Positions 2,846 to 60,153 of a stretch of 64,000 nucleotides of DNA are shown here, one piece after another. Each line of letters starts with the position of its first letter. The stretch's first letter is position 1. The position numbers and the translations under genes are program-made. The notes below the pieces were generated by a model, which was not told the origin of the DNA, did no database searches, and was given only the letters and a program-made list of their open reading frames with translations. Source of the DNA: Ostrea edulis (taxonomy: Eukaryota); contig NC_079170.1 in the NCBI RefSeq assembly GCF_947568905.1, positions 17,980,001-18,044,000 on the forward strand, read 5' to 3'.

Positions 2846-5800
2846 TTGGTAAATAACCGAGAATACCAGAGAAGTTGTCATATCGATCGAAAAGTTTTCA
2901 TTGAAAATTACTTTCGTTTTGAATTAGCAAGGATGCACTCTTCTATAAAGGAAGATAATTTTATGTTGTTGATCCAAGCTCTTCGATTCACGAATAGAGG
3001 ACTTAAACAATACGTTGACATTTGTCTGGAAGATATTTATCGTGGGATCATTCGAAATGTGTCCAAAGTTGTTCCAACCTGCAAGACTTATTGCAACAAT
3101 CTGCATGGGAATTCATGGTGTGCATATTGTAAGAAATGGAAGACAGAAATAGAAAGTTATGTTCGATTTTCGTCATTCAAAAAGAAACTAAGATGGCAAG
3201 ACATTGACTTTGGAAAGTTAACAGGACCGGACAGAGATCTGGCAAAAACTGAGTTATTTTCTGTCTACGTCAGACGGCATTCAAATACACCAGTAGAGTT
3301 TGATATTCAAGCAATTTTATCATTGTTTCAGAACTGTGTTTATTTTGACATCGGAAAAAACAAGACTCTTCTTGATTCTGTTCGCAACATTAGGAATAAA
3401 CATTTTGCCCACACGATAAATTTTGAAATCACTAGCAAGAGCTTGAAAGATTCAATTGATGAACTCATTCGTTTGTTTCAACATCCATCAATGTTGAATC
3501 ACGGAAATTCAAAGTCTTTCATTACCATGTTGAAGGAACTGGGGAAAAAGAATATGGAACTGGTTGAGACAAGTACACATGGACTCTGTAGACAGGTATT
3601 TGAACTCCGATACGATTCTGCCATAGCACAAAATAAAATAGATACATATTTATTGCCACAGTCTACAAGGACAGGTACCATCAGATCGATAAGGGGACAG
3701 TGTCATTACGTTCCTGTTTTCCTCCTCCTCCTCACATCCTTGATTATGGCGTATTGGTTAAAGTACGAGACAGACACTAACATGAAAGGTAAATACAAGA
3801 GTAATAATGTACCGGGTAGTTGAAGGTACATTTGTCTCCAATTCAGATTCTTGAGGTGAATTTTCTTTTATAGATGATTGGTACTCTATAATGACCAGAA
3901 ATTATCCACAAGAACCCTATAATCCAGAGGGTAAGTTCAAAGCATCAAACCTTAACAAACAAACAGTCGAAGAAAATTCTGAATTCGCTAAGTTCACATT
4001 TAAATATTACCTCTTGATTCCATTGCACGCTGGTATCTTATTATTCGACATGTGACACGTTGAGTAAACGTGAGGGTTCTTATTTCTATTTTACAAAGGT
4101 AAATCCACCAGCAGGCTTGGGGTCAATTACATAGCAATGTAAAGCATTACATTATGGTGATTTACCATTACTTAGAAAATTTGACATTTATCCTCACCAT
4201 TACATATTACGTGAGAGTGCATTACATTACGTTACATATTACCGAGTGGAGCTCGGACGGGCCGAAGCAAGGCTCGAAAGGTAACACGTATGTAAAAGGA
4301 AAAAAAATAGGAAAATCAACAAATGAATAGCGATAATCTCTACACATGTTCACTAAACATTTTGTGATCCTATGGGCGCCGCCATATTGTTTTGTTCATT
4401 AGTTGCTTCTAGAGTTATTCGTGTTTTAATTTTGAATGCCAAAAATAAAGACTGACGTGTAATTTGTAATTCAAACGTCCAGTTTGTTATAAATGAATGA
4501 CATGATTATAATTGTTAAAGTTTTTAGCCAATCATCAAATAAAAAACAATAAGACTAAATAGGTGAACGAGTTCATGAGTTTTTTAAACATAAGAATATA
4601 TGATATACTTACGGTTACTTTTTTTATCATTTTGAATTTATTGGTTAATTTTCTTTAGTTTTAATTTTAAATTGCAAACGGGATGTATTGTTGTTGTTTA
4701 TAATTATTTGATTTGAAAGAGAAAAAAGTCGAGGTTAAATGTGACATCACAATACACGGTTTCCGTCGCCTTGCGTTTTATTTCCTGCGTTAAACAAATA
4801 GGCGGATCCCGTAGAACTGTTATTCCTATACATCCCCCTTTGATATTGAGATGTTACTGGGTGTTTAGCGCAGAGAAAGTTGCATCAAAAATATTTTAAT
4901 TTTGAATGAATCATAATCTATACCGTACTTAACGGAATTATGATTATCACTTTGGACACGCCAATGACGATTTCTTGCTTTGCTCGGTCCCACGGTCACA
5001 CCGCATACATACTACATAACTTTAAAATTCTGTAGACAATTCTTATTGGTTGATTGCTCAATGTTTAATTCAAGAATGAAAACTTCACTCAGATATCAAG
5101 AGCAATTTCTGAAAACAGTTCACAATAGTTTACTCTGAATCCTTACAAATAGCCTCAGGGAAACATTCAATAAATATTTGAAGTATTTCTTATTATACCT
5201 TAGATATTAGAACTAAAATGTCCATTGAATACTGTTAACACTTAAAGACAATATACATGGAGATGGTATTTTTGTTCATAAGGTCGAAAAGCCAATCAAT
5301 AGTATAATGAATTAGTCTAAACCTCTAACATAGAGGTGCCAACAGTCTCGCTTAAAATCAGCATTTCGCAACTTCTGTGGTCATTATAACGATCTAGTTT
5401 GTCAATACAACCTATCATTGGGTCAAGTGGTGTCCGACGTGTTTCATACCGATTGTTAGGCCGTTCTTGGCACACTGATTTTGACTACGGATAACTCCGT
5501 TTATCTGATCAAAATATAGGGTTCACGACGAATGTGACCGGTCGACAAGGGATGCTTACTTCTCCTGGGCACCTGATCCCACCCTTGGTGTGTCAAAGGG
5601 TCCGTGTTTGCCCAGCTCTCTATTTTGTATTGCTTATAGGAGTCATGAGATTGATCACTGCTCGTTATCTTCACCTTTCACGATCAATTTTTTGAAGTAA
5701 TATAAATGTAAATGAATGTGATGTGCATTACAGTATATCTTCAACAAGTGATGCATTACATTACCATTAATTGTATTGCACACATGGCCCATTACACATT

Positions 5801-8800
5801 ACACTCCCATTACACTGACTTTGGGTGTCATTACATTATTATTAGACATTAATATGAGCCCAGTCCTGTCCACCAGACACAAATTCTTCAACACTATTTG
5901 AAATGTATGCGACTAGGAAGCATAGCAAGACACAGTATCTATTTTTTAAGAAAAAGAAGATATGCTAGGAAATCTAAATGTCCCACATTAATTTGGAATA
6001 AGATATATCTTAAAAACAATGGATTAAAATATGAAGAGTCAATTAATTGAATTGGAGAACCGATTAGTTTTATATCTTGAAATATAAATGTATGAATATA
6101 TATCCTCTTTCTTGCCAATAGGTTGCAAAACCGGTGAATATGAATATCCATATGCTGTTGACATCGACTTTGAATTCTATCGTTCTACACACGACACCCT
6201 AGTCGGTCGAAAATGGTTGCTTTACGAATTGGAAAATATAATGCGTTCTTCCCCTAGAGGTGTAATGCTTATAGCAGAAATGGGATATGGAAAATCTGCA
6301 ATAATGTCTCATCTCGCGTGCCAGGACGATCAACGACAAGCAGGTTATCCAATATACGAAAATATATCCGTTTTCCATATTTGTACTTTTGGATCGCAAA
6401 AAACATTGCTTCCAGGATTATTTGTCAAAAATATGGCAGGAGGATTTGCAAAGTACATACCGAAATTTAAACAGTATTTGGAGCAAAATCGAAGGTTTAA
6501 AGATTATTTTGAAGGTGGAAAATGTCTTGAGGATGCAGAAGGATGTCTAGATTTTCTAATTATCAAGACACTTCATCAACTCAAAAATGAATCAAAAACT
6601 CATATTGTCATCATAGATGCCCTGGACGAGTGCATAGAATATGATAATAGATTCAATATTGTAAGCCTGCTCCTTAGAAGAATTACAAAATTTCCAAAAT
6701 ATATCAAATTTCTAACTTCATCCCGTAATATTTCACTCATCTCTCAACTAAACCGACATTTAACTGTGTTTGAACAAAAAGCAGAGAACGATAAAAATAA
6801 CAGAGATATTGGCCTCTTTGTTAAGGAGAAACTGCGGAATGCTCAACCGAAGGACATCAGTAATCTCAAATCTGTATTCAAAAGTGTGGACGAGATCAGC
6901 GACAAAGCTGTGAAATATGGAAAAGGCAACATGCTTTTCGTATTGCATGTATTGAAACAGTGGACAGACACTGAACATTTGTCTTTCGATAACATTCCTA
7001 ATACACTTGAAACATCATTTTACGATCAATTTCTCAGAATATTTGGAAACGATGACGCTCAGTTTGGTAGTACACGAAAAATCTTAGAAATATTGTGTGC
7101 AAGCACTGAACCGCTGTCTGAGGAAGAAATTTTCGAAATTGCTAACATCCCTGAGGCTGATCAGATTAACACAATTAAGTTGATAGGAAATGAATTAAGC
7201 CATTTCATCAGACTAGTTCGTGGGAAAGTAATAATCCTTCATAGGTCGCTCTCGAAATTTCTAACAAATAACGAAAGGAGAAGAGAACAATTCTACATAT
7301 CAAAACAAAATGGTTGTGCCCATTTGTCTTACTACTTCCTACGAAGTGTGAATTCTAAACGGAGTTTCAATGATACTGATATTTTACAGTTAACAGAATA
7401 TGTATCTTGCTCGAAAAATCAATCATTGAAAGATCTCTACTTGAAATCTGGAAAAAAATTCTATTCTAGTATTCACTACAGGACTAGATTTACGCATCCT
7501 CCGATGTTCCTTCTTCACCGAGCTGCGCTGAGATTGAATTCATACTCCAGTATGTCTCTTTTTCTTGATCTGTATTTAAAATTTCCGTTGGCACATGTTG
7601 ACGAAAATGACGATGGAAATATCACTGCTTCGTACGTGGCTGCGGCCTATGGTAATCATGAAGGACTTGTGGCTCTTTTGAAATATAGAGCCAACGTGAA
7701 TTTTACCAGATTAGGACCCAGAATAATGAATACTTCTTTTAATGACATAGTCAAATTCAGCAAACATTCTGCCCAGTGGGAGTACAATCTTTTGAATATT
7801 GCCTCTCAAAATGGACATCTTAATGTCGTTCGCATTCTTCTCCGAAATAGGGTTCATATGAAACATAAAATTTCCTGTGGACTCGATTCTTTTCAACTGG
7901 CTTCCGAATTTGGACAAACTTCGGTTGTGAAATACTTTCTAATGAATTACATGAGTACATTTCATAACAGTTTAAATTTCTCTCTCTATCTGGCCTCTAA
8001 AAACGGACACGAAGATATCGTATCAATATTATTGTATCATGGAGCTGTTGACATTTGTCTTCCTTGCACAGGGAGGATGTATTGGACAAAGTTTCACCAA
8101 ACTCGTTTACAAGTTATTGACAATGATTTTGATTTGCAGCAGTTTAACTACATTTTTAAGGATGACAGACGGATGATACGATGCGAGACAGCGATAGAAG
8201 TAGCAATTCAGAATGGACACACTGAAGTTGTAAAACGTTTAATAGCACACTCCAATTCTAGTCTAGACTGTAGAGAATCTGGTGGTAGAACACGTCTTTT
8301 GACAGCAGCTAGGTTTGATCGGACAGACATTTTAGAGTTCTTTATGTCTCTCAACGTGTCGTTTGCTCATCGCTGTGTTTCTGGGTATCAGAATAAGGAG
8401 GAATTTGAACTTAGCAAGACGGAGGAATTGGAATATGATAAAAACCTGTGTTTGAATAACATGTCAGTGTTTCACCTCGTCGCTGAGTATGGAAGTTCGA
8501 AAACCGTAGTTTTGCTGTATGATAATTTTAAAAACGCTTTCTGGACAGCGCGTGATATATTTGGAGCAACACCTTTACACTACCTAGTTTGTCAAGGAAG
8601 ACTTGAATTGATCAGTAATTTCGAAAGCAATTACAACATCAGATCATACAATGGTTCTACACTATTACACTCAGCAGCCATATGTAAACAATACTCCCTT
8701 CTTGACTTCCTTCTCATCCGAATACCTGAATCTCCTTTGGATAATAGGAAACAAGGCTTTGTTCATTACCTTGCTCAGAGTGATAGTTTTAAATATGAAA

Positions 8801-10872
8801 ATGTACAATCCGTCATTGACCACACCCAACCTTTAAGAAAAACAGTTTTGGGAAGAATAAAACAAGAATTATTTTCCCGAGATGCGATGAAGAGAACCCC
8901 GCTTCACTACGCGGCTATTCACGGAAATATAAATTTTTATCTGCTTTGTTTTGAACTCGATTGGAATCACACAAATTGGAACGATCTGTTTGGGCTTCGT
9001 GACATCAACAATTTAACAGTACTAGATTTGTTGTTTAAAAATTTACCGCCATATGATAGTTTTCCAAAATCAATTTTAACACCTACAAATTCCTTTATTA
9101 TAAACCCACATCAGCATTTTATCTCTTTAATTCTCGATAGATCATTTCTAAGAAATATGATAGAAAAGAAACTTAATGTATTCTGTCAGTACAGTGTCCG
9201 ACGTGGATATCCTCGTATCCTTGAAAGACTTTTGAGAAAATACCTGGAACATGGTTATAATATTAGCCATTTTTATGAATGCGTATCATTTTTTTTCCAT
9301 ACAATCCCTACAATGGAATACATACACCCAATGTATTTTGGTCTTTTCCCCTTATCGTCTTTCTTGAAATGTAACTGTGATAGTTTGAAAACGTTTACAT
9401 TTCATAAGTTGATGGAAGACCGCAAGAGATCGTTTAGAATGTACGTTAAGACAGCACTGAATTTTAAGATGAACTGTAAATATATGAATTTTTGCTATGA
9501 TGACGAAGGATATAACCCGTTACATAGGGCTGTTATTGGGGGAAATTTTGATGGTTTCGAATATCTAATTGACAATGGAATGTCTGTGAATGTCAAAACT
9601 AAAGACGGGAGGGATATTTTGGATTTAGTAATTGAGTATGCACAATGCTCTCCAGAATATTACGGTTTTATGAAAGAAGCAATGTCTACAAACATGTCTT
9701 TTTCAAATACAATAGAAGTTGACATCCTGCGGGGGAGAAGATATAATAAAATTGCTAGCTATATAGCACAAAACACGAAACTTATCAAAAATAGGACCCC
9801 AATGCAAATATGCAACAGGAACACAAACGCTCTCAGCATATCTCATCTTGCTGCCGCTAAAGGTCTTGTGAACGTTTTAAAAGCAATTCAAATAAACTTT
9901 GGAGAAACTTATGCTGATTGCACGAATTATATTAATATTTCAACAACATATCTATTAAATTTTTTCGGTCATTTATCATTCCATACGACTGAGTCAATTG
10001 ATTTTGAATCCTCTGCTGCATTATATGTTAGATATGCGTTGGACTTCAGACCATTCCTTTATCCCAAGGGTTCTGTACTTTGGAAATGTAAGCGTAGAAT
10101 CTCAAATTTCAGAAACGCAAAATCGTTACTAAGCTGCGCTAGTAAAGCGAATGAGGAAAGGGTGGTACTTTCTATGCAAGTTATCAAGTTGAGTGGTGTA
10201 AAATCAGGAGATGATTATGACAAATTCTGTCAGTCTTGTGGATATGATAAATTTCTTTCAGACAAACCTCAATTTAATTGTATTGTTAACGACGTAAAGA
10301 AATTTTTGAAAAATCCTAAGACATATAAGTACAAGTACTTACTGGAATACAAAAGACATGAAGTTTTATTTGAAAAAGTCAATTGTAAAATGAAGAGGAA
10401 TAAAAGTAAAAAATGTCTCTCAATTATATCGCAGAAAATAAAACTGAAGCGAAAAGCTCAGAGCGTTTTCTTTAGCATAAGCGTCGGAATACCATGGATT
10501 ATTATTGGAAATTTATACGAGTATGACATAATGAAACCTTTCCAAATTTCTGTTGAAACTGAATATGTTTCTACTTCAAGCAGTACTATTACATACATTA
10601 TTGCATATGTGTCTCGATTGTATCTCCAACATCACCATGGATTTAGTTCTTTAAAGAAATATGACTACTGGGATGCTTTACGAAAAAGTGGAAACATTAG
10701 AGGAAAGACAATGGTCCGCACAATTCTGAATACTCCAATATCTGAAATTCGGAAATGGAAAGGAACTAGACAAAGCAGGCTTATGTTAAGATACATTCTT
10801 TATAACGATCATGCAAGTGATACACCTTTACGTGATTACGACATTCTCAGGAAAATGATGGATAGTCTCTGA
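2846..10872 (+). CDS. HEPN (DZIP3-type)-TM-NACHT-like NTPase-ankyrin repeat protein; exons ~2846-3788, 3874-3930, 6122-10872 (5' start uncertain)
   Basis: Exon 1 has an RxxxxxH HEPN-like motif (VRNIRNKHFAH) and a TM stretch (VPVFLLLLTSLIMAYWL). Phase-1 junctions AAAG|GTAAAT (3788), TTATAG|AT (3874), GAGG|GTAAGT (3930) and CCAATAG|GT (6122) all keep frame. Exon 3 has Walker A (IAEMGYGKSA), Walker B (IVIIDALDEC) and many ankyrin repeats (ASYVAAAYGNHE, LNIASQNGHL, TPLHYAAIHGN, NPLHRAVIGGN). Confidence 0.8.
4112..5868. mobile_element. hAT-type non-autonomous element with nested insertions, in intron 2
   Basis: Imperfect TIRs CAGGCTTGGG / CCCAGTCCTG flanked by an exact 8-bp TSD TCCACCAG (4104-4111, 5869-5876); ATTAC-rich subterminal repeats. 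Confidence 0.75.
5406..5680 (+). repeat. Dispersed repeat family R2 (other copies ~18170-18395, 27461-27724, 28688-28912, partial inverted ~28150-28210)
   Basis: Recurrent block CACACTGATTTTGACTACGGATAACTCCG..GTGACCGGTCGACA..GCACCTGATCCCACC..GAGATTGATCACTG..CACCTTTCA. Confidence 0.8.
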
Positions 10873-39052: not shown

Positions 39053-39128
39053 ATTCCTGTGGTGTAGTGGTTAACACGCTTGTCCCATCAGCGGGCAAGA
39101 GATCTGGGTTCGAATCCCAGTGGGTTTT
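39053..39128 (+). tRNA. tRNA-like cassette inside Dada A1 (probably not a functional tRNA)
   Basis: A box TGGTGTAGTGGT; D stem GTGT/ACGC; anticodon stem TGTCC/GGGCA with loop CATCAGC; T arm CTGGG-TTCGAAT-CCCAG; poorly paired acceptor stem; T-run follows. Confidence 0.6.
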
Positions 39129-39424
39129 TCATTCTTGACACACTATGCAAGTGATTCCAACTCCAAAGTTCAAAGTAAAAACACAAATCAGATTTTTTTA
39201 TGCATTTATATAAAGTAAGAAAAAATATGTTATGTTCACAACCATTTCATTTAAAGACAACTTATTTACAATATATACAGTCTTTCCCTCTGCTTTTCAT
39301 AAGGGCTTGGGACCTTCAAAATCTATACAATGGATTCATATAAATTTAGGCAGCATTAAAAGTTTTTTTTGGTGTTTTTTGTGTTTTTAAATTTTTTTGG
39401 TTATTTTTTAAAACATTTTGGTAT

Positions 39425-42400
39425 CTAGTTCACTGGTGGTGGGGGTTCCTCTGATGGGTCATCTGGTGCCTTCCTCTTGCGACTGGTGTATCCCCTGGCA
39501 ATCATCGCTCTCATCCACTCCTCGTAGGACTGCTCGGCGGTGGCCTGGCAGAACCAGTTGCCGAAATATTGCCTGTGTGTGGGAGCGATCTTGGCTGCCC
39601 CACACTTCCCGCACTTGTTCGGTCCGACCCTGGGAGTGGAAGTCTTAACTCTCTCCCCCTCGGCTCTCTTCTTCTCCACCTTCCTCCTGTAGCTGGCCGT
39701 AGACTTGGACGGTCGCAACGGACCTATCAGCACGACTGGGACCGTGCGCTGTTGGTACGGCTGGAGGACGACGGACGGCGGCGGGAGTCTGGTCGGTGAC
39801 GGGAGTCTGGGCGGGGATGGGAGTCTGAGCGGGGACGGCATCCTGTTGGGCGACGACGGAGGAGACCGGATCCTAGTACGTGTCTGGCCGGCAGTGTTGC
39901 GAGGCAACACGTACCTGAAGGCAGGGGCGGTCTGGGACACCAAGGTGTCTGGACGGGTCAGGGCTGGCGGGACTGGCTGGGCGGCCGTCACAGGGGGGTC
40001 CGAAATCTCAATTCCCTGGGACAGGACCTGTTCCTCTCGCTTCTTCTGCCTCCTTCTGTCCCTGTAAAACACACGACACATTAGCCTCCCTAAAGCAGGT
40101 GAACTTAGTATGACTTGGCATTAAAAGAAATGTAGCCTATACAACTTACCACAGCAGGAGAGTGGTGTTGTTGATGGCCAGGAGCTGGATAGCTGTCATG
40201 GCCATTACTCTGGGGTTGTCCAGCACCACATCGCTGATCTTGGTGTAGGATGCCAGGATCAGACTCCATCTGGTGAGGGTAGGAGAATTCTGGCGTCTCT
40301 GGGGTCCCGTGTGCAACTGCATCAGCCTCCTGATGACTGCCTCCATGTAACGGTTGGCGTCCGGAAAGTTGGCCGGTCCCGAGGCACTGCCGACGAAGGA
40401 TCTACAAAGGGAAAAGGGGGACAACATGAGTCGTGGGTCGGACAATTAAAAGAATGAATCTATGTCAAGCGTCAATTGACAAATGACAGTCACCTCTTGG
40501 TCTTCTCCTCGTTGGCTTTCACCGGTCCTTTGGCTGTCTTGGCTGCCTGGAACCTGCCCTTGGGAGGGGACTTGGTCCTGGGCTGAAACACCGTAGGTCT
40601 TTTGTCCTGGGGTTCCAGTTTCTCCCGGAGGGCAATCAAGGCATCCTCCTGACTCCGAGACAGGGTCCTGCACGACCTGAGCTCATACAAGTAGTCTGCC
40701 AGGTCCTGCACTTGCTGGAGTCCGGAGGTGGGTTCCTGCAGCCGCTCCTCCTGTAATATCAGACACAAAGAGTCATATGATGGAAACAAACTCGTACAAA
40801 CACGAGAACATGTTTAGTGCCACAGTATTGTAACTCACCTGGTTCTGCTCTTCCGGTGCCGACTCTGCCTGGGATGAGAGGGGTGGAGTTCTTTCTGGTA
40901 GGGTGGAAGGTGCAGGCTCCGGCTGGGGTGGGGTCAGATGGGGGGTCTCGGGTCGAGGTGCTGGCATTGAGGCAGCGACAAGGTTAGGCTGTCCAGTGGG
41001 CCGTGCGGCTTTTCTCGGCGACCTGACAGTACTGCGAAGTTGCCGGACAGCACTAGTGCTGGATGGTGGCGGTGCAGTACTGGATGGTGGTTGCACGAGA
41101 CCGGCCACTAGCTTCCTGGACTGCATCACTGCTGCCGCTGCCTCGATGTCAGGCTCTGGAATGGTCAGGTCTTCGACGACTACCACTTCCTCGCCGAAAC
41201 CCTCGTCCATCTCCCCGTCATCCTCCTCCAGGTCCTCGTCCTCCTCCTTGATCTCCTGGAGTGCCTTGCCCGTCTGGGAATACAGGTACTCCACCCCTAT
41301 CAGTTCTCCGGTGTGGAACCGCGGGTGCTGGAAGGCGGGGTCTAAGGGGGACCCAAGGACAGTCTGTGCCAACTGGTTGACAGCGTGGCGCAGTTCCCTC
41401 TTGGTCATCCACTCCTGCTCTCGACCTTGGATGCTGACACCCTCCTCTGCGGCCTGAGTCTGCTTTGCCTCCTTCAGGGCGGTCAGGTCCTCATCGTCCC
41501 ACTGGAAGATGCAGCCGGACAGACGACGCATGAACTGGGGGTACAGGGGGTGCGATTATTCCGTGGTACAAGCACTCGCAATCCTCCTCATGAAATGCCA
41601 GATGTCCAGCCTCACCTACAATAGAAAGCATTGCGTCCTTACCAGTTGACAATGTGTCCTCAAAACATGCATTACCTAAGGGAAACAACACCTACCTGAG
41701 TGGCGAACCACTGCTCAAACTTCTTGCCTACGTAGTTCGTGCCACAGCAGTCACGATCCACGTAGACAACCTCAGGTGGGTTGACTCTGGCCTCGCTGTA
41801 CCTCCTCTGGAGTCCGTCGAACATGGCGTCCAGTCCAGCTCCCTCTCCAGCAGTGACGACAGACATCAACACCTGTCAGGACACAAAGTTCGAACAATTA
41901 TAATGTCAACATGTAGTAATATCGGGATTACAGCAATGCAAACATGAGCGTACTCACCTGGCCGTGTTCGTTCCCCACGTTGGTGGCCCACGCGGCAGTG
42001 TCGGCAGCCGTCCCCTGCAGCTTCCTCACCACTTTCTTGGTGGAGTCCACTTTCAGGATCCTCCCGTAGACGCTGGTGATGGAAGCCTTGACTTCCTCCA
42101 GTCTGGACATCACGTCTCGACAGAAGACGGAGGAAAGCCACTGGCAGGACGGGATCTTCCGGGGCGTGGGCGGGGGAGAAAACTGGGCCACAGCCAAGAG
42201 TCCCTTCTTCTGGGCGCTGGTGAAGGCCTGGCAGTCGCTGAGGTAGTGTGCCGTCCTCCTGAGCATCTCCTCGCCGTGGAGTTCCGAGAGGTTCTGCCGG
42301 AGTCTGGCGACACTGTTCCCCAGTCCCCGCTGTCTCAGCATCTTCACCACTTCCATGTCGCAAGCCATCATTCTGGTCAAGATGCAGGGAAACTGGAGGC

Positions 42401-43851
42401 GGTGTCCCACGTCGAGCTGGCTCACTATCTCCTCGTTCCAGCTGCTCAACTTCTTCTTGCATCTGGTGCACTCCAAGTACTCAGCAGCCAGATAGTAGAA
42501 GCCAGACATGGCCAACACTCTCCGCAGGGTCCGGTAGATGCCAGAGGAAATTAGCTCCTGTTTCTGGCACTTGAAGTCCGGACAAACCAGCCTCACAGCC
42601 CACAGTCTCTTAGGCATCCATAGAAAGATGGGCCTGGCAAAGTACCTGAGAAATTCAAAGACAGAATTAGGCTACCTTTTAACACCCCAATATCACTCCA
42701 AGAACACATTTATAACATCAGAGAGTCAAAGCACCTGTCAGCAATGGGCGGCTGCGTGCACACCAATGGGGGGCTAGGGGGGTGGTACCACATGTGGTCG
42801 ATGACGTCAAAACACATCTCTGGCTTTCCCTGCTGGTTGACGCGGAAGAGGGCCTTGGAGATCCACTTCAGGTCACACGGGTCCAGGACCTGTTTCCAGG
42901 TACTGTACACCACATCTACAATGTTGTAAGACAAAATAAGGCTTGTGTTGTGATTAAGCGATAGAATAATGAGCAGATGAAATATCAAAAGCATAATAAG
43001 TAAGCTTTATATCAATAGCAAAAGCAGTAAATGGAAGGCAGGTTACACGCCAAGCGCAAGTGAGTATATAGGTATTGTGTATCATTATATAATATAGGTA
43101 CCACACCAACACACCACCAGCCGAACACCATAAACTCACCGCAGGAACCGTGCTTGTAGGAAAATAGAAATAAATTCACGAATTAAGCATGATATCGTTC
43201 TCAGATTAGAAATATTACATATGAATAACACTATCGTTTTCAAATACACAGTCTATACTTACCACCCGAGAGGATCTCCATGGTCTCGATCTCCCGTACT
43301 GCGGCAGCCAGGTCTCGGTCCTCCATCACGTCGGTCTTCAGATGAGGCTCCTGGGACGGTCGGGTCGCTGTCGCCGGCATACTTACCTTCCTCGGCTTGG
43401 CATCCTCCAGAGACTTCTCCACCCTTCGCTTCGCCTCCTTCTCCTTCAGGATCTCGTGGACCATGGGGTACATCTTCACGTACTGCAGGAGACGGAACTT
43501 GTTCTGCGACAGGGGGGTACCCTCCTCCTTCTCGCCAGCACACGCGACTGTAGCCAGTACGCCAGTAACCCACCCGAGATCATTCTCCAGGACCCACTTG
43601 AACGTCTGTCCCCGGTACTTCCCGAACTGCAGGATGTGCTGGGACAGCACATTTTTGTAATTCCTCACAGCTGCGGGACCACCGAGGACCTCCACACGTT
43701 CTCTAGCATTCCTCATAACAGTCCAGCCGTCCAGTGCGGGCTTCAAAGGAAGCATGGGCAGGCTGCTAGCTTCCTTTGGGGCCCGCAGACGAAGCTCCCC
43801 CGAGTGGATTCTGGCGAACTGGGGCTCGAAAGGATTCAGGGATCTCTCCAT
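39425..43851 (-). pseudogene. Dada transposase gene, copy A1 (multi-exon; in-frame TAA at 41558-41556 and a probable internal deletion)
   Basis: Exons with GT-AG boundaries, e.g. 42645-41958, 41872-41696, 41615-40839, 40750-40494, 40401-40150, 40061-39425. Motifs LQFGKYRGQTFKW, YFARPIFLWMP..CPDFKC..EYLECTRC, DSTKK, YVDRDCC, LDIWHFMRR, GELIGVEYLYSQTG, and C-terminal CGKC..H..C. Confidence 0.8.
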
Positions 43852-44836
43852 GATTCTAAATGTAAATGTATGTCTCAAAAATTCTCACTTTTACATTAAA
43901 TGAATCAAATGCGCGCTCATATTACTGCGCCAAAAAACAACATGGGGGGTAAGTGACACATCACATAAATGTAGACACGTTTAACCTCAAATTTCCAGTA
44001 TTTTGAATGAAACTGAGTGTGCTACTGTCGAATTTAGTTTAAAATCAACTGATTTAAGCTTAAAAACAGCTATGTTTCATACAAACTATCTGAGATTGCA
44101 GTTTTCAACCAATGTAAACAGTGTGGAGGGGTCCGGTTTCGAGCAGGTAAGTTTTCGCTTAAAATGCTTATTTAAACCCTACCTACATGGTCGTGCATTA
44201 ACGGGACAATTGTTTATGATTAACTCTGTGCATTGAAGCTAAAATTCAGCACAGTTTCACTCAAAATATCTTTAAGAAAGGTTTTTCAAAATTTCTACAC
44301 ATTGTGTGTAATGACCGGCTCCGAGCAAACAAGTTTTCACTTAAAAATCACATTTAAACGTTATCTACACGGCCATGCATTTACGAGGCAATTCTACATG
44401 ATTGATTGAATTGATTTTAGGCCAAAATCCAGATGCAAATCGGTTAGAATTTAAATTCTGGGCATTTCATCGAAGGCCGCGTCCCTTCGAATTTCCTCTA
44501 TTTACAATGTTTACAACCTCCCGTTTTGCATAAATAAGCCGATTTCTCTCTGGCTACTCGCCTCAAATTAATGAAACTCATCGTGCTGAATCTTTTGATA
44601 CCAAATTCGACTTCAAACTCCCGATAAAACTCTAGTAAAGTCGATTTTTGTATTTTTCTATATAATCTACTACTTACCAAAATGGCGGTCGTCCCAATTT
44701 AGAATCTAAACGCGGCGCTCTGATTGGACGGAAGCCCAGAATTGGAACCAAGAATTGGAACTTTTGGGACAGAATTGGAACCATTCTGGGCATCTGATTG
44801 GTCCAGAAATTGGAATCTCACCACGAAGATTGCGGA

Positions 44837-51821: not shown

Positions 51822-52217
51822 ATGGCCCAATACATTCCTGTATTAGACTCGTTTATCATAGAGACCCTAGGATCCCGAGGGATTCCGCCACGGTCATCAG
51901 GCCAAAGATCATCAGCAACAACACCAGATCCAGTGATCAGGCCGGAGTCATCGGCCCCTCCTGTGCCACGAAGGCCAGCGCTAAGAGAATTTATGCCTCC
52001 GTTGCCTTCACCTCTCCAACCGCCACGCAAATACCCGATACCTAGTTGGGGCACATCGGCATTGAATGTGACAATTCAATGTCCCGTGTGTCGAGACGAA
52101 GGGATGAATGAGTTCTTGTGTCAGCAGTGTCTGCAAAGACCATCCTGTCATGACTGCACGCGGTCTTTAATAAAGGTCAGGAATAGTTGCCCTCTATGTC
52201 GATTTGACAGAGGGTAA
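51822..52217 (+). CDS. RING-like protein, unit 2 copy
   Basis: Translation identical to 35508-35903. Confidence 0.6.
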   Translation: MAQYIPVLDSFIIETLGSRGIPPRSSGQRSSATTPDPVIRPESSAPPVPRRPALREFMPPLPSPLQPPRKYPIPSWGTSALNVTIQCPVCRDEGMNEFLCQQCLQRPSCHDCTRSLIKVRNSCPLCRFDRG

Positions 52218-52508
52218 TGTATAGGCGACTGAGGAGGATGAAACATGAAGGGGTAGCTTACACAATAACTAGACTTCCAAGACCCGAGACTCGCTCCTTT
52301 GGCTGAACGGATGTTCGAAACAAGCTTAGCGCGATCGTGGTCAACAAGAATCGGAGTAAAGTCTTATTTGTTACCCGTGGTCTTTTGTAGATATAACACA
52401 AGTAAAAAAAATAATCAACAATATATATACCATCCCGAACATTTCAAATTATTAATACTGAATATATATCATACTGCCCGTAAACAATTTCTCATACTCT
52501 TTTGGAAT

Positions 52509-53135
52509 ATGTCGAACTTGAATTTATTTCAATTCAGTGTGCTCGCGTTGGGAATTGTTTCGTGGATGCCATTATATACCGGGATGCTGTTAGGTGTCGA
52601 TTGTAGCATGGTCAACCATGTGTGGGACAATAACTGCGGCTTGTCTATTCTCTTATTCGTCGTGGGAGATGGATTAAAGGAGGTCGTCGAAGCGACGATG
52701 AAGAAAAAGAACGAAAAGAACGAAAATCCTTACGACAAGATATTACTGACATTGTTCGCGCAAATTGCGGTGTATGGTTTTATGGCCCTAACCACTTTAA
52801 TGATCGTCCCGGAGTGCTGTGTTCTAAGATACATTCTGGAAGCCCTGCTGAAATTATGCCTCGGTCTCCTCGTGGGAATCATGACCATTGGCATGATGTC
52901 TTTAACCAACCAGATCACCGAAAAGCTGATTTTCTACATCGGCAGAGTCGTATTCGTCGTCGTGATTGGTATCCTCTTATTGAGCAGTAACATCTCATAC
53001 ACTCCATTCTTTAACGTATTCGCTTTTGTGTGGACGATAATGACAATGGTGGTTACGTGTTTCATGCGTAGAAATTACATGAAAGCGAACCATGCCGTAA
53101 TACAGAAAACACTTATGAGCGATCCTGACTTATGA
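52509..53135 (+). CDS. Multi-pass membrane protein, unit 2 copy
   Basis: Differs from unit 1 at VVF/VVL and DPDL/DPGL. Confidence 0.6.
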   Translation: MSNLNLFQFSVLALGIVSWMPLYTGMLLGVDCSMVNHVWDNNCGLSILLFVVGDGLKEVVEATMKKKNEKNENPYDKILLTLFAQIAVYGFMALTTLMIVPECCVLRYILEALLKLCLGLLVGIMTIGMMSLTNQITEKLIFYIGRVVFVVVIGILLLSSNISYTPFFNVFAFVWTIMTMVVTCFMRRNYMKANHAVIQKTLMSDPDL

Positions 53136-53299
53136 CGATACAGAGGACATCCATCCATCTAGTTCTTAAGCAGTTGGTTTGTACAATCTACACAACAAGG
53201 ATTGTTTCTACACTGTTTACATGTGCACTGTAAATCTATGTTAGTCAATAAAGATAAATTACAATGGTAGAATTGTAGAACTTTTTTCCCCCCACCCGG

Positions 53300-53542
53300 T
53301 CACCCACAAAGGTGCAACCACTTGCTGGTTATACTTGTTAAAATATTTGATACCCCATTTGCAACCGAATATTTGAAACTGGATACGTCACTAACCTTAT
53401 AATGTGTTATGGGTTTTTCGCATTTTTCACATCCGTAATAAGTATAAACAGTTCCATCGTGCCCGTATACTTGAACAGGCATAACCTTAAAACAGCGCCA
53501 TTCTTCTAATGACATATATGCTGTGTAGTCAGAGACATGCAC
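53300..53542 (-). CDS. Small Cys-containing ORF, unit 2 copy
   Basis: Translation identical to 36986-37228. Confidence 0.4.
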   Translation of the reverse strand: MHVSDYTAYMSLEEWRCFKVMPVQVYGHDGTVYTYYGCEKCEKPITHYKVSDVSSFKYSVANGVSNILTSITSKWLHLCG

Positions 53543-54906
53543 AATTTTTTTCTCATAACACCCTTTTAAAAAGCCTCATTTCTCCCTTTTTCACCAACCA
53601 ACAAGGAACCGAAGCCAAACTGTATGCACAAGATAACGACATCGGTATAAGTAACGGTAGACATGCCAAAGGAACCACAAGTGCCCCCGCCATTGTGATT
53701 ACCACAGATGCTAGTCGGTCTCGAAGTAGGGACAGAGACGTTCACATATTTATACTGTGGTGCTACCAAACCGTTACCATACACAATGCCGTATTATAGC
53801 TGCGTACGAGGCGACTTTCCCATAACGTCTTAAAGTCGCAGCCCACCAAGACGTTATGAGTCGAACATAACGTTAACCTAGTTTCGCCTCGCGGTCTTAT
53901 AATTTCTGAACAAATGCCATTCTTACTGGTTGGATGAAAAAAGAAAGTATGGACGTGCTAAAAGGACGCATTAATGGTATAATGCATAATATACGTAGTG
54001 TGATGAACATAAAGTCTTAATACATAATTAAGAACCACAATAGCAAACTAAGGTCCAAGTGAAAAAAAAAAATATCCAAGAATTTGAATTATTACTACGA
54101 CTTAATTATTGTGTTATGGTACACATACAATATACCCTACATGGACATCACACAATATCTATTCCATAACAAAATCTGTCTGCAAGTATACGTTATTGGA
54201 AGTTGGTATTGAATGCCGATGTGGTCCGAGTTTCTTCGGGAGGCATGAAATAAAACGCATGAAAACAGATAGAAGGACAGGCAATACCGATAATAACGGG
54301 GACATGCTACATAAACGCTTCCTGTCCTTAGCTAGTAGCATCGCCCTATATCGGTAACACCCTGTTGACATGCATTCATATTGGTACCTCAGATTGCCAC
54401 TACCTACACACAGTTTCCCCTAGAAAATGTTCCAACCTATCATAAAGAAGCGCCCTTTTGAAAGTTTGCCGGTCTCAAACATTTCACCGCCTGGACATTG
54501 GGGGTGAATTTGTCAAGGCGTAGTGTGAAATGGGGAATGCACTGAAACTTGTTGGACAGGAAAAATTAGGTAAAACATACAGACAGACTAACGAACTGAT
54601 AATTATTTTATTAATTTGTTTGTTTTGTTGGGTTTAGAATTTTACCATGTTATGTATATAATCTATGATGACATAAGAGAAAATGCTTTACACTGCTCTC
54701 TAAATGTGAATTTTTCATTTTATTTCATTTTTTAAAAATGACACATGTGTGAAAGGTGTATGTGTGCGTGTGTGTAGCAGTTGTCTTTCTTGTATACGCA
54801 GTAACAACGTACTTCCAGATGTTTACAGTATGCAAATTCTTAAAACGTTTATTTCATACTACTCTCCGCTCAACAGTACTTATATTTTGTAGATGATTTT
54901 GCTTGT

Positions 54907-54933
54907 GTACTTGCTTTTCGGCAGTACATATAT

Positions 54934-54965
<32 letters not shown>

Positions 54966-54972
54966 GGCCCCT
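54907..54972 (+). ncRNA. RNU6: U6 snRNA 5' part, unit 2
   Basis: Same as 38592-38657. Confidence 0.95.
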
Positions 54973-55357
54973 TGACACAGGATGGTACGCAATCTTCGTG
55001 GTAAGGGTTCCAATTCCTGCAGCAAGAAGGGGGGAGAGAAAGAGGAAAAGAGGGAGAAAAAAAGGGAATTTAGGGCCGAATTTTCGGCCCCTATTTCTAA
55101 AGCGTTTACTCTCATATTTCATTCCATTTGTCTCTAATTTGAGCTCAGTTTTCAGTATTTAAAAGCCATTTTTAATGCGAAAAATACTACAAAGTAGGGG
55201 CTCATTTCCGTCCCCTTTATGTTAATTTTTAAGGGTTTTTTGCTAGTGTTCTATCATTTTCTCCTTAATGTAACTCATTTCAAAGCTAATTTTGCCTCCT
55301 TTTTCATCATTTACATTTAAATATCCTTTCAAATCCTTGTGTTTTGTGTCATGGTCA

Positions 55358-55433
55358 ATTCCTGTGGTGTAGTGGTTAACACGCTTGTCCCATCAGCGGG
55401 CAAGAGATCTGGGTTCGAATCCCAGTGGGTTTT
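55358..55433 (+). tRNA. tRNA-like cassette in Dada A2
   Basis: Same as 39053-39128. Confidence 0.6.
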
Positions 55434-55729
55434 TCATTCTTGACACACTATGCAAGTGATTCCAACTCCAAAGTTCAAAGTAAAAACACAAATCAGATTT
55501 TTTTATGCATTTATATAAAGTAAGAAAAAATATGTTATGTTCACAACCATTTCATTTAAAGACAACTTATTTACAATATATACAGTCTTTCCCTCTGCTT
55601 TTCATAAGGGCTTGGGACCTTCAAAATCTATACAATGGATTCATATAAATTTAGGCAGCATTAAAAGTTTTTTTTGGTGTTTTTTGTGTTTTTAAATTTT
55701 TTTGGTTATTTTTTAAAACATTTTGGTAT

Positions 55730-58700: not shown

Positions 58701-60153
58701 GCGGTGTCCCACGTCGAGCTGGCTCACTATCTCCTCGTTCCAGCTGCTCAACTTCTTCTTGCATCTGGTGCACTCCAAGTACTCAGCAGCCAGATAGTAG
58801 AAGCCAGACATGGCCAACACTCTCCGCAGGGTCCGGTAGATGCCAGAGGAAATTAGCTCCTGTTTCTGGCACTTGAAGTCCGGACAAACCAGCCTCACAG
58901 CCCACAGTCTCTTAGGCATCCATAGAAAGATGGGCCTGGCAAAGTACCTGAGAAATTCAAAGACAGAATTAGGCTACCTTTTAACACCCCAATATCACTC
59001 CAAGAACACATTTATAACATCAGAGAGTCAAAGCACCTGTCAGCAATGGGCGGCTGCGTGCACACCAATGGGGGGCTAGGGGGGTGGTACCACATGTGGT
59101 CGATGACGTCAAAACACATCTCTGGCTTTCCCTGCTGGTTGACGCGGAAGAGGGCCTTGGAGATCCACTTCAGGTCACACGGGTCCAGGACCTGTTTCCA
59201 GGTACTGTACACCACATCTACAATGTTGTAAGACAAAATAAGGCTTGTGTTGTGATTAAGCGATAGAATAATGAGCAGATGAAATATCAAAAGCATAATA
59301 AGTAAGCTTTATATCAATAGCAAAAGCAGTAAATGGAAGGCAGGTTACACGCCAAGCGCAAGTGAGTATATAGGTATTGTGTATCATTATATAATATAGG
59401 TACCACACCAACACACCACCAGCCGAACACCATAAACTCACCGCAGGAACCGTGCTTGTAGGAAAATAGAAATAAATTCACGAATTAAGCATGATATCGT
59501 TCTCAGATTAGAAATATTACATATGAATAACACTATCGTTTTCAAATACACAGTCTATACTTACCACCCGAGAGGATCTCCATGGTCTCGATCTCCCGTA
59601 CTGCGGCAGCCAGGTCTCGGTCCTCCATCACGTCGGTCTTCAGATGAGGCTCCTGGGACGGTCGGGTCGCTGTCGCCGGCATACTTACCTTCCTCGGCTT
59701 GGCATCCTCCAGAGACTTCTCCACCCTTCGCTTCGCCTCCTTCTCCTTCAGGATCTCGTGGACCATGGGGTACATCTTCACGTACTGCAGGAGACGGAAC
59801 TTGTTCTGCGACAGGGGGGTACCCTCCTCCTTCTCGCCAGCACACGCGACTGTAGCCAGTACGCCAGTAACCCACCCGAGATCATTCTCCAGGACCCACT
59901 TGAACGTCTGTCCCCGGTACTTCCCGAACTGCAGGATGTGCTGGGACAGCACATTTTTGTAATTCCTCACAGCTGCGGGACCACCGAGGACCTCCACACG
60001 TTCTCTAGCATTCCTCATAACAGTCCAGCCGTCCAGTGCGGGCTTCAAAGGAAGCATGGGCAGGCTGCTAGCTTCCTTTGGGGCCCGCAGACGAAGCTCC
60101 CCCGAGTGGATTCTGGCGAACTGGGGCTCGAAAGGATTCAGGGATCTCTCCAT
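55730..60153 (-). CDS. Dada transposase gene, copy A2 (spliced frame open where checked; probable in-frame internal deletion)
   Basis: Lacks the TAA insertion of A1 and reads DIWHFMRRIASACTTESHPLYPQF; same exon structure. Confidence 0.7.

What the first reader, a model, noticed from the sequence alone, without database searches (positions are those of the whole stretch)
2846..10872. HEPN - transmembrane helix - NACHT - ankyrin fusion: an NLR-like protein with the effector across a membrane from the sensor
Seen: the two apparently separate ORFs (2846-3823, 6088-10872) are joined in frame by a 57-nt exon (3874-3930), with phase-1 junctions throughout. The product has an RxxxxxH HEPN motif, one TM helix, Walker A/B motifs and a long ankyrin array. 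Known: HEPN domains with an R-x4-6-H motif are often RNases, and NACHT plus repeat proteins are NLR-type immune sensors. Inference: a single TM helix would put HEPN and the NTPase-ANK module on opposite sides of a membrane, which standard NLRs do not do. This could be a membrane receptor that activates a cytosolic RNase, a candidate undescribed bivalve immune system. The start codon is unresolved (possible acceptor at 2821, first in-frame ATG at 2936).
Basis: partly seen in the sequence, partly recalled or inferred. Interest (0 to 1): 0.72.

Follow-up and report, generated by a model that had tools for sequence, protein, structure and literature searches.

The report
Membrane-anchored HEPN–STAND–ankyrin oyster gene
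This flat-oyster gene joins a predicted RNA-cutting HEPN domain, one membrane-type helix, a switch ATPase and ankyrin repeats; such fusions are known in bivalves, but the conserved helix between effector and ATPase appears unreported and raises a topology puzzle.

Summary
The window is Ostrea edulis. All four splice sites are GT/AG and phase 1. The start ATG is at 2933, not 2936.

- **N-terminal domain:** Pfam DUF4559. This appears to be the CXorf38 family (link from memory plus matching motifs), published as a HEPN family in 2013. D124 and R154-N155-x4-H160 are invariant, and a Cys4 zinc ribbon is inserted.
- **ATPase:** an NPHP3_N/TANC-type STAND module with a winged helix, not Pfam NACHT. 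An ankyrin array follows.
- **Hydrophobic 20-mer (residues 257-276):** it recurs at the same place, with divergent sequence, in all 9 DUF4559 loci of this genome, in other oysters, mussels and clams, and more weakly in coral-like homologues. A sister group with DZIP3-type HEPN has very strong helices there.
- **Clade pattern:** every helix-bearing protein falls in one STAND-ankyrin clade.

HEPN-NACHT-ankyrin fusions and their bivalve expansions are already published. I found no mention of the helix between HEPN and ATPase, so this is a new variant of a known kind.

Topology is unresolved. No signal peptide and the flank charges favour a cytosolic HEPN. No RNA evidence could be obtained. The scan has noted other HEPN-STAND-ankyrin genes in this genome.

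The parts
2933..3788 (+). Coding exon 1 (start ATG 2933; residues 1-285 plus one base): HEPN domain plus hydrophobic helix
   Evidence: ORF; donor AAG|GT at 3788/3789; identical to P0001
2957..3592 (+). DUF4559 / CXorf38-type HEPN domain (about residues 9-220)
   Evidence: Pfam PF15112 E 5e-13, 49.6 bits against a cut-off of 27; AlphaFold2 pLDDT about 90 over residues 1-220; ESM Atlas fold neighbours are HEPN_Swt1 and HEPN_DZIP3
3080..3130 (+). Cys4 zinc-ribbon insert (C50, C54, C63, C66) between HEPN helices
   Evidence: Cysteine columns C54, C63 and C66 are invariant or nearly invariant across; PMC3710099 describes a zinc ribbon inserted in the CXorf38 HEPN
3392..3412 (+). HEPN catalytic motif R154-N155-K-H-F-A-H160 (Rx5H); partner D124 at 3302-3304
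   Evidence: R154, N155, H160 and D124 are invariant in 16 homologues from oysters to corals; they match human CXorf38 R162-N...H167 and D134 as described in bioRxiv 10.64898/2026.05.28.728550
3701..3760 (+). Hydrophobic helix, residues 257-276 (CHYVPVFLLLLTSLIMAYWL): predicted single transmembrane segment
   Evidence: Kyte-Doolittle 19-mer mean 1.71; conserved position in homologues; isolated helix between linkers with pLDDT under 50 in two AlphaFold2 models
3874..3930 (+). 57-nt micro-exon (linker residues about 286-305), phase 1 on both sides
   Evidence: Acceptor TTTTATAG| and donor G|GTAAGT; conserved in five paralogues; present in P0001, P0002 and P0003
3931..6121 (+). Intron 2 (2191 nt), filled with highly repeated elements. 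Its first 120 nt or so stay open in frame and form the tail of the short 'HEPN + helix only' isoforms predicted for paralogues
   Evidence: Contig depths of 10^4 to 10^6 at 4155-5139 and 5337-5730; short isoforms P0121 and P0123; conserved stretch after the donor
6122..10872 (+). Coding exon 3 with stop codon: linker, STAND NTPase, winged helix, ankyrin array, C-terminal region
   Evidence: ORF; acceptor CCAATAG| at 6121; identical to P0001
6250..6726 (+). NPHP3_N-type P-loop NTPase domain; Walker A 6274-6297, Walker B 6604-6633
   Evidence: Pfam PF24883 E 2.3e-11; motif coordinates; G-x-G-K-S and D-x-L-D-E-C are invariant in 15 homologues
7054..7401 (+). TANC1-like winged helix-turn-helix of the STAND module
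   Evidence: Pfam PF25521 E 8e-9; AlphaFold2 pLDDT 80-95
7621..9618 (+). Ankyrin-repeat array (about residues 805-1470); the last 400 residues have no Pfam match but ankyrin-like language-model features
   Evidence: Ank_2 E 9e-41 and other Ank families

Best explanation
This is an intact three-exon Ostrea edulis gene, already in RefSeq as LOC125656669. It belongs to a tandemly expanded family found in bivalves and in coral-like homologues. The family architecture is: N-terminal HEPN domain, disordered linker, one hydrophobic helix, a 50-80 residue linker, an NPHP3_N/TANC-type STAND NTPase with winged helix, then an ankyrin array.

Shown here: the gene structure, the domain identities, intact catalytic residues (D124 and RN-x4-H in HEPN; Walker A and B in the NTPase), and clade-wide conservation of the helix.

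Inferred: it is a conflict or innate-immunity protein of the HEPN-STAND class. The ankyrin array would recognise a ligand. NTP-dependent STAND oligomerisation would bring HEPN domains together, and HEPN dimerisation would create the composite RNase site that cuts RNA, by analogy with RNase L and Ire1.

I take the helix to be a genuine membrane anchor (about 0.7). There is no signal peptide, the 255-residue HEPN domain is synthesised before the helix emerges, and the N-side flank is richer in K/R. Type II insertion is therefore the most likely topology if the protein is inserted co-translationally: HEPN cytosolic, NTPase-ankyrin part exoplasmic (about 0.45 given a real transmembrane helix). This part is not settled. 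The confidence given is for the identity, the architecture and the membrane-anchor reading together, not for the topology.
For: - **Gene model:** (exact identity to P0001; GT/AG; phase 1). Five paralogues conserve the micro-exon and splice sites.
- **Architecture on one continuous ORF elsewhere:** the same domain order sits on a single uninterrupted ORF in P0048 (L012 95-6220, DUF4559 type) and P0127 (L010 3001-6801, DZIP3 type).
- **HEPN:** PF15112 is above threshold. D124, R154, N155 and H160 are invariant. Sub-threshold Pfam hits are HEPN_AbiU2, HEPN_Swt1 and HEPN_DZIP3. ESM Atlas fold neighbours are HEPN_Swt1 and HEPN_DZIP3. The CXorf38 family is published as a HEPN with a zinc-ribbon insert, fused to NACHT and ankyrin (PMC3710099).
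- **STAND and ankyrin:**
- **Helix:** KD 1.71 here, 1.6-2.65 in oyster, mussel and clam homologues, 1.44-1.72 in coral-like homologues, and 2.4-3.2 in the DZIP3-type clade. It always lies 43-79 residues before Walker A. All 9 DUF4559 loci of this genome have it. The background rate is 0.017 per 100 residues. It is modelled as an isolated helix in AlphaFold2. All helix-bearing rows fall in one STAND clade and none in the sister clade.
- **Topology hints:** summed over 18 proteins, the N-side flank has 58 K/R and 23 D/E, the C-side flank 39 K/R and 38 D/E. In-frame stops lie just upstream of the ATG in two paralogues.
Against: - No transcript evidence could be obtained. The four runs that hold the locus are genomic DNA, so the exon joins rest on the RefSeq prediction and on conservation.
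- The PDB fold search did not separate HEPN from other four-helix bundles. A profile search of PDB sequences found no HEPN.
- The helix in this particular protein is only just over the classical threshold (1.71 against 1.6).
- No dedicated transmembrane predictor was available.
- Type II topology would put a P-loop NTPase and ankyrin repeats, both typically cytosolic modules, in a lumen or outside the cell. The opposite topology would put a zinc-ribbon RNase there and would need a 255-residue folded N-domain to cross without a signal peptide. Either is awkward.
- The per-protein charge bias is modest, with a K/R difference of -2 to +4.
- No function has been tested for any member of the family.
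Confidence: 0.6

Rival explanations
1. The helix is not a membrane span. It is a buried, oligomerisation or autoinhibitory helix, or one that inserts into a membrane only after activation, like the N-terminal helices of plant CC-NLR resistosomes, fungal HeLo domains or MLKL. At rest the whole protein would be an ordinary cytosolic HEPN-STAND-ankyrin protein.
For: Both flanking modules are typically cytosolic: a zinc-ribbon HEPN RNase, and a P-loop NTPase with ankyrin repeats. Both keep intact catalytic motifs. The coral-like homologues have weaker segments (KD 1.44-1.72) that contain R or K. This protein's own score is marginal at 1.71.
Against: Relatives reach KD 2.4-3.2 over 19-29 uncharged residues, which is typical of true membrane spans. 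The sequence diverges freely while hydrophobicity and position are kept. AlphaFold2 does not dock the helix on either domain and leaves disordered linkers on both sides. A single helix could not insert after activation without also separating the two domains.
Confidence: 0.25
2. The fusion is a gene-prediction artefact or a minor isoform. The main products would be a short tail-anchored 'HEPN + helix' protein (exon 1, with or without the micro-exon and a read-through tail) and a separate STAND-ankyrin protein starting at the ATG at 6088.
For: No RNA evidence was obtained. RefSeq predicts short HEPN + helix isoforms of 312-352 residues for three paralogues. The first 100 nt or so of intron 2 are conserved without frame-breaking indels in four of five paralogues. 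ORF 2 has its own in-frame ATG 34 nt upstream of the acceptor.
Against: Phase-compatible canonical splice sites are conserved in five paralogues. Long fused models are predicted independently in Ostrea, Saccostrea, Mytilus and Ruditapes. The same architecture is one continuous ORF in P0048 and P0127. The conserved 'GC...F-D-F...GR-W' linker encoded at the start of exon 3 continues the frame.
Confidence: 0.1
3. The helix is a real single span but with the opposite topology. The NTPase-ankyrin module would be cytosolic and membrane-tethered, and the HEPN domain would be lumenal or extracellular, acting on RNA in endosomes, phagosomes or outside the cell.
For: This keeps the ATP-dependent switch and the ankyrin repeats in the cytosol, where such modules normally work. 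Relatives with only a short N-tail before the helix (P0036, 36 residues) could insert this way. A conserved Cys lies a few to about 30 residues after the helix (nearly invariant). It could be a cytosolic acylation site; this is a guess.
Against: There is no signal peptide, and in-frame stops lie upstream of the ATG in paralogues. From established knowledge of signal-anchor insertion, moving a folded 255-residue N-domain across the membrane without a signal peptide is disfavoured. The charge bias points the other way. Cys4 zinc ribbons are unusual in oxidising compartments.
Confidence: 0.15

Closest known systems
CXorf38-family HEPN proteins fused to NACHT, ankyrin and DEATH domains (Anantharaman et al. 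2013, PMC3710099); DUF4559-NACHT genes of the clam Corbicula fluminea (PMC8298618)
   Same: Same N-terminal family (Pfam DUF4559), zinc-ribbon insert, RN-x-H motif with an upstream Asp, and fusion to a STAND NTPase and ankyrin repeats. Lineage-specific expansion in marine invertebrates.
   Different: Neither paper mentions a transmembrane helix between HEPN and the NTPase. In 2013 the family was listed for vertebrates, hemichordates, cephalochordates, Ciona and Nematostella, not molluscs. The link between DUF4559 and CXorf38 rests on my memory of the Pfam/UniProt annotation plus matching motif positions. It was not tested directly.
DZIP3/hRUL138-like HEPN-NACHT proteins of bivalves and cnidarians (Pinctada fucata PMC9646362; cnidarians PMC8260672)
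   Same: An N-terminal HEPN RNase-like effector ahead of a STAND NTPase with C-terminal repeats. Large tandem, haplotype-variable expansions. Proposed role in antiviral or anti-transposon RNA degradation.
   Different: A different HEPN family. The main coral group has NACHT + WD40 and no helix. Only a subgroup (P0105, P0126-P0132, P0138) has the helix plus the same NPHP3_N-ankyrin module as the oyster gene.
Ire1 and RNase L (KEN-type HEPN RNases)
   Same: A HEPN RNase whose activity depends on sensor-driven dimerisation or oligomerisation. RNase L has N-terminal ankyrin repeats. Ire1 couples a sensor and a HEPN RNase across one transmembrane helix.
   Different: The domain order is reversed (HEPN is N-terminal here). 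The switch is a STAND NTPase rather than a kinase or pseudokinase. There is no sequence relationship beyond the HEPN superfamily. The resemblance is in mechanism only and is inferred.
Transmembrane NLR-like proteins of the sea cucumber Apostichopus japonicus (AjNLRC4, AjNLR-new; PMC13133943)
   Same: Invertebrate NACHT-type proteins with predicted transmembrane helices. One is claimed to have an extracellular NACHT domain that acts as a receptor for Vibrio.
   Different: Ig domains instead of HEPN; no ankyrin array; two helices in AjNLR-new. I did not test for homology to the oyster family beyond the STAND class.
TANC1/2, NPHP3 and ANKRD50-type STAND proteins
   Same: Best Pfam matches for the NTPase (NPHP3_N) and the winged helix (HTH_TANC1), followed by ankyrin repeats.
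   Different: From memory, those vertebrate proteins are cytosolic scaffolds and lack an N-terminal HEPN domain and a helix of this kind. Not tested here.

Membership tests
HEPN superfamily, CXorf38/DUF4559 family | Significant match to the family profile | tested here: met
   PF15112 at 49.6 bits against a cut-off of 27, E 5e-13; 12 of 13 aligned homologues match
HEPN superfamily, CXorf38/DUF4559 family | Conserved Rx4-6H motif, usually with N after the R | tested here: met
   R154-N155-K-H-F-A-H160 at 3392-3412; R, N and H are invariant in 16 sequences, and D124 is also invariant
HEPN superfamily, CXorf38/DUF4559 family | Four-helix up-down bundle of HEPN type | tested here: inconclusive
   AlphaFold2 gives an all-helical model with pLDDT about 90. 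ESM Atlas neighbours are HEPN_Swt1 and HEPN_DZIP3. In the PDB, HEPN chains (1wwp Z 6.3, 4pqz Z 6.3, Cas13 Z 5.8) do not stand above unrelated helical bundles, and Foldseek found nothing significant.
HEPN superfamily, CXorf38/DUF4559 family | Zinc ribbon inserted in the HEPN domain (a family trait per PMC3710099) | tested here: met
   C50-x3-C54-x8-C63-x2-C66; these columns are invariant or nearly invariant
HEPN superfamily, CXorf38/DUF4559 family | Metal-independent endoribonuclease activity | not testable with these tools
   No member of the CXorf38 family has a reported assay in the papers I read
STAND NTPase (NPHP3_N/TANC type) | P-loop domain with Walker A and Walker B, followed by a winged helix | tested here: met
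   PF24883 E 2.3e-11 and PF25521 E 8e-9; GxGKS and DALDEC are invariant; confident AlphaFold2 model
NACHT (Pfam PF05729) / NLR | Match to the NACHT profile | tested here: not met
   No PF05729 hit at E <= 0.1 for this protein. Some distant homologues carry it in precomputed lists, so it is a related STAND family, not NACHT in the strict sense.
NACHT (Pfam PF05729) / NLR | C-terminal leucine-rich repeats | tested here: not met
   Only ankyrin families were found
Single-pass membrane protein | One hydrophobic segment of about 20 residues above the Kyte-Doolittle threshold | tested here: met
   Residues 257-276, 19-mer mean 1.71 (threshold 1.6); the only such peak in 1887 residues
Single-pass membrane protein | Hydrophobicity conserved in position while the sequence diverges | tested here: met
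   present in all 9 loci of this genome and, in the sampled tree, in every protein of the clade with enough N-terminal sequence (three of them only KD 1.3-1.6); absent from the sister clade
Single-pass membrane protein | Call by a dedicated predictor (DeepTMHMM, TMHMM or the deltaG scale) and a topology prediction | not tested
   No such tool was available; only flank-charge counts were made
Single-pass membrane protein | Experimental membrane integration | not testable with these tools
   -
Ankyrin-repeat proteins | Multiple Ank profile matches | tested here: met
   Ank_2 E 9e-41 and Ank E 4e-28; repeats from about residue 805 to 1470

The most novel reading that the evidence does not exclude
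A whole clade of animal STAND proteins (bivalves, coral-like homologues and others) would be type II membrane proteins. A cytosolic HEPN RNase would be wired through one transmembrane helix to a lumenal or extracellular NTPase-ankyrin sensor. This would be an Ire1/ATF6-like trans-membrane signalling device built from NLR-type parts, able to sense material in phagosomes, endosomes or outside the cell and answer by cutting RNA in the cytosol.
Probability: 0.25. Interest if true: 0.85.

Novelty: new variant of a known kind. Interest (0 to 1): 0.55.

Why it matters
HEPN-STAND fusions are among the most expanded candidate immune genes of bivalves and corals. They have been catalogued only by domain counts and none has been tested.

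A conserved membrane-type helix between the effector and the switch ATPase changes how these proteins can be imagined to work. Either the family is membrane-tethered with effector and sensor in different compartments, which no characterised NLR-type protein does, or the helix is itself part of the output.

The question can be settled with standard topology and RNase assays. This oyster gene, with its eight paralogous loci, is an intact and compact starting point. If type II topology holds, it would be an independent invention of Ire1-like signalling across a membrane.

Tried and rejected
- **RNA evidence.** The look-up of sequencing runs listed five runs, none recorded as RNA. The four I laid cover introns and intergenic DNA evenly and show no joints at 3788/3874 or 3930/6122, so they are genomic.
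- **PDB fold search for HEPN.** Foldseek found no significant match. VIA-align listed HEPN chains among many unrelated helical bundles. A profile search of PDB sequences found nothing relevant.
- **hhalign against DZIP3.** Comparing the DUF4559 alignment with a two-sequence DZIP3 alignment failed because the second alignment was poorly built. I did not repeat it.
- **Upstream signal-peptide exon.** Rejected. The frame is open only from 2807 (in-frame TGA at 2804-2806). All paralogue models start at the same Met, and two paralogues have a stop immediately upstream.
- **Second transmembrane segment near the C-terminus (SVFFSISVGIPWIIIG).** By hand the mean is about 1.4, and it is not conserved in P0002. 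Rejected.
- **Sequon and cysteine counts as a topology clue.** There are 20 N-x-S/T sequons and 35 Cys in 1582 residues, about what composition predicts. Not informative.
- **Literature on the five LOC identifiers.** No paper found.
- **Ankyrin regular expression.** It was too strict to split proteins by repeat type. I used the tree instead.

Full report
**What is in the sequence**

The raw sequence shows a donor AAG|GTAAAT at 3788/3789. A polypyrimidine acceptor TTTTCTTTTATAG| ends at 3873. A consensus donor GAGG|GTAAGT follows at 3930/3931, and an acceptor TCTTGCCAATAG| ends at 6121. All junctions are phase 1.

A word search with ORF 2 identified the organism as Ostrea edulis. It returned a public RefSeq protein, P0001 (LOC125656669, 'uncharacterized protein', 1887 aa), at 100% identity.

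In a script I checked that the translation of 2933-3788 + 3874-3930 + 6122-10872 equals P0001 exactly, with GT/AG at all four sites. No sequence was printed. Searches used window references exon by exon, or the stored public protein and parts of it. That equality check is the only joined step.

The start codon is the ATG at 2933-2935, not 2936. The frame is closed by a TGA at 2804-2806. Two paralogues have a stop right before the same Met. An upstream coding exon, and with it a signal peptide, is therefore unlikely.

**Support for the splicing**

I could not get RNA evidence. The five runs that hold the locus are not recorded as RNA. The four I laid cover introns and flanks like exons and show no joints at the predicted junctions, so they are genomic DNA. 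Support is therefore indirect but good.

- The genome has at least nine DUF4559 exon-1 loci in two tandem clusters: five on contig 7 at 17.89-18.21 Mb, including this one, and four on contig 6 at 85.35-85.42 Mb.
- In the five contig-7 copies the micro-exon, its acceptor and both donors are conserved. The 85-nt intron 1 carries indels that are not multiples of three.
- The same architecture is encoded by one uninterrupted ORF in distant homologues. P0048 (DUF4559 type) is at L012 95-6220 and P0127 (DZIP3 type) is at L010 3001-6801.
- RefSeq also predicts short 'HEPN + helix' isoforms for three paralogues, made by reading through the donor after the micro-exon.

**The N-terminal domain**

Exon 1 matches Pfam DUF4559 above threshold (E 5e-13). 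An alignment of 16 homologues from oysters, mussels, a clam and coral-like sequences has only seven invariant columns. Among them are D124 and R154-N155...H160, an RN-x4-H motif.

The next-best Pfam hits across members are three HEPN families: AbiU2, Swt1 and DZIP3. An AlphaFold2 model is confident over residues 1-220, with pLDDT about 90. Its nearest predicted structures outside its own family are Swt1-like and DZIP3-like HEPN clusters. Against solved structures the result is not discriminating. HEPN chains appear at Z about 6 among many other helical bundles.

Anantharaman et al. 2013 defined the CXorf38 family as an active HEPN with an inserted zinc ribbon. [quoted passage not shown] The oyster protein has the Cys4 insert (C50, C54, C63, C66). 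A 2026 preprint gives R162-N-E-I-M-H167 and D134 as the predicted catalytic residues of human CXorf38, which matches the spacing here. That DUF4559 is the Pfam name for CXorf38 is from my memory plus these matches.

**The NTPase and repeats**

The best profile is NPHP3_N (E 2e-11), followed by the TANC1-type winged helix (E 8e-9). Pfam NACHT itself does not hit. Walker A (AEMGYGKS, 6274-6297) and Walker B (IVIIDALDEC, 6604-6633) are intact and invariant in homologues. Ankyrin repeats run from about residue 805 to 1470. The last 400 residues have no Pfam match but ankyrin-like features. There are no LRRs, so 'NLR' is an analogy only.

**The hydrophobic helix**

Residues 257-276 (3701-3760) are the only 19-mer window in the protein above the Kyte-Doolittle threshold, at 1.71. 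Taken alone that would be marginal. The comparative picture is what gives it weight.

- All nine DUF4559 loci of this genome end exon 1 with such a segment.
- Saccostrea (2.38), a second Ostrea cluster (2.16-2.21), Mytilus (1.84-1.93) and Ruditapes (2.65) have one at the aligned position with unrelated sequence.
- Coral-like homologues have a weaker one, 1.44-1.72.
- A group with a different HEPN family, DZIP3 type (P0105, P0126, P0127, P0129-P0132, P0138), has unmistakable membrane-type segments. They score 2.4-3.2 over 19-29 uncharged residues.
- In every case the segment lies 43-79 residues before Walker A. Two relatives have the helix with little or no recognised N-domain (P0036, P0102).
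- Elsewhere in these proteins such windows occur at 0.017 per 100 residues.
- In a tree of the NTPase domains, all helix-bearing proteins fall in one clade (SH-aLRT 98). The 'helix-less' rows in that clade are ORF calls that begin only 15-67 residues before the P-loop, so they are truncated rather than negative. The sister clade of 26 DZIP3-HEPN-NACHT-WD40 proteins has none.
- In two AlphaFold2 models the segment is an isolated helix between linkers with pLDDT under 50. It shows no sign of belonging to either the HEPN domain or the NTPase domain.

I conclude that the helix is an old, selected feature of this STAND-ankyrin clade and most likely a membrane span.

**Topology and mechanism**

With a single span, the HEPN domain and the NTPase-ankyrin module must lie on opposite sides of the membrane. 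Which side is which is open.

Three things point to a cytosolic HEPN, that is type II insertion. There is no signal peptide. The HEPN domain is complete before the helix emerges from the ribosome. The N-side flank is richer in K/R and poorer in D/E (58/23 against 39/38 over 18 proteins).

That would put an NTPase with intact Walker motifs and an ankyrin array into a lumen or outside the cell, which is unusual. The reverse topology would put a zinc-ribbon RNase there and would require moving a folded N-domain across without a signal peptide. A third option is that the helix is shielded at rest.

The likely output is oligomerisation-driven HEPN dimerisation and RNA cleavage. This is inferred from RNase L, Ire1 and the prokaryotic HEPN-STAND systems discussed in PMC3710099.

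**Comparison with what is known**

- HEPN-NACHT-ankyrin fusions were described in 2013.
- 45 of 99 NACHT genes of the clam Corbicula fluminea carry DUF4559 (PMC8298618).
- More than 50 DZIP3-HEPN-NACHT genes are reported in the pearl oyster (PMC9646362), and large numbers in cnidarians (PMC8260672).
- Transmembrane NLR-like proteins, one with a claimed extracellular NACHT domain, are reported in a sea cucumber (PMC13133943).
- None of these papers mentions a helix between HEPN and the NTPase. My full-text searches found no such description, and no paper names this gene.
- Earlier notes of this scan record other HEPN-STAND-ankyrin and Ig-HEPN-ankyrin genes in the same genome.

**Verdict**

The gene is a member of a published kind (HEPN-STAND-repeat) and is already annotated. 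The conserved membrane-type helix, shared by two HEPN families on one STAND-ankyrin clade, is a feature I could not find described, and it poses a real, testable topology problem. I score interest at 0.55.

Noticed in passing
window 3699-3763: Genomic contigs from three runs of one study join 3699 to 3763. They skip 63 nt in frame, which are almost exactly the codons of the hydrophobic helix. The shorter side of the joint is only 21 letters and the letters in between are not known. This may be a divergent allele or paralogue rather than a true deletion.
   Followed up: no
window 3931-4055: The frame stays open for about 41 codons past the micro-exon donor (G-KFKASNLNKQTVEENSEFAKFTFKYYLLIPLHAGILLFDM-stop). 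This stretch is conserved without frame-breaking indels in four of five paralogues. It forms the tail of RefSeq's short isoform of LOC125656670 (P0121) and includes a second, weakly hydrophobic stretch.
   Followed up: partly
window 4155-5139 and 5337-5730 (intron 2): These stretches have contig depths of 10^4 to 10^6 against about 10^2 for the exons. Many internal joints lie at 5400-5680. They are highly repeated elements, probably transposon or satellite-like, inside the intron.
   Followed up: no
G000 contig 7 17.887-18.211 Mb and contig 6 85.35-85.42 Mb (L001-L009): Two tandem clusters of DUF4559 exon-1 copies, all on the + strand. The contig-6 type (P0006, P0009) appears to lack the micro-exon, and P0006 has an extra strongly hydrophobic segment four residues from its C-terminus.
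   Followed up: partly
L010 (ENA ERZ26696836) and L011 (GCA_949826985.1): DZIP3-HEPN - helix - NPHP3_N - ankyrin proteins are encoded as single ORFs on contigs of unidentified origin. On L011 the gene seems split into abutting ORFs, which suggests frameshifts or introns. I did not establish the taxon.
   Followed up: no
window 35508-44000 and 51822-60200: A large duplicated block with matching ORF sets and GC-rich segments (GC 0.51-0.58). Other findings of this scan cover it as snRNA and Dada transposon material.
   Followed up: no
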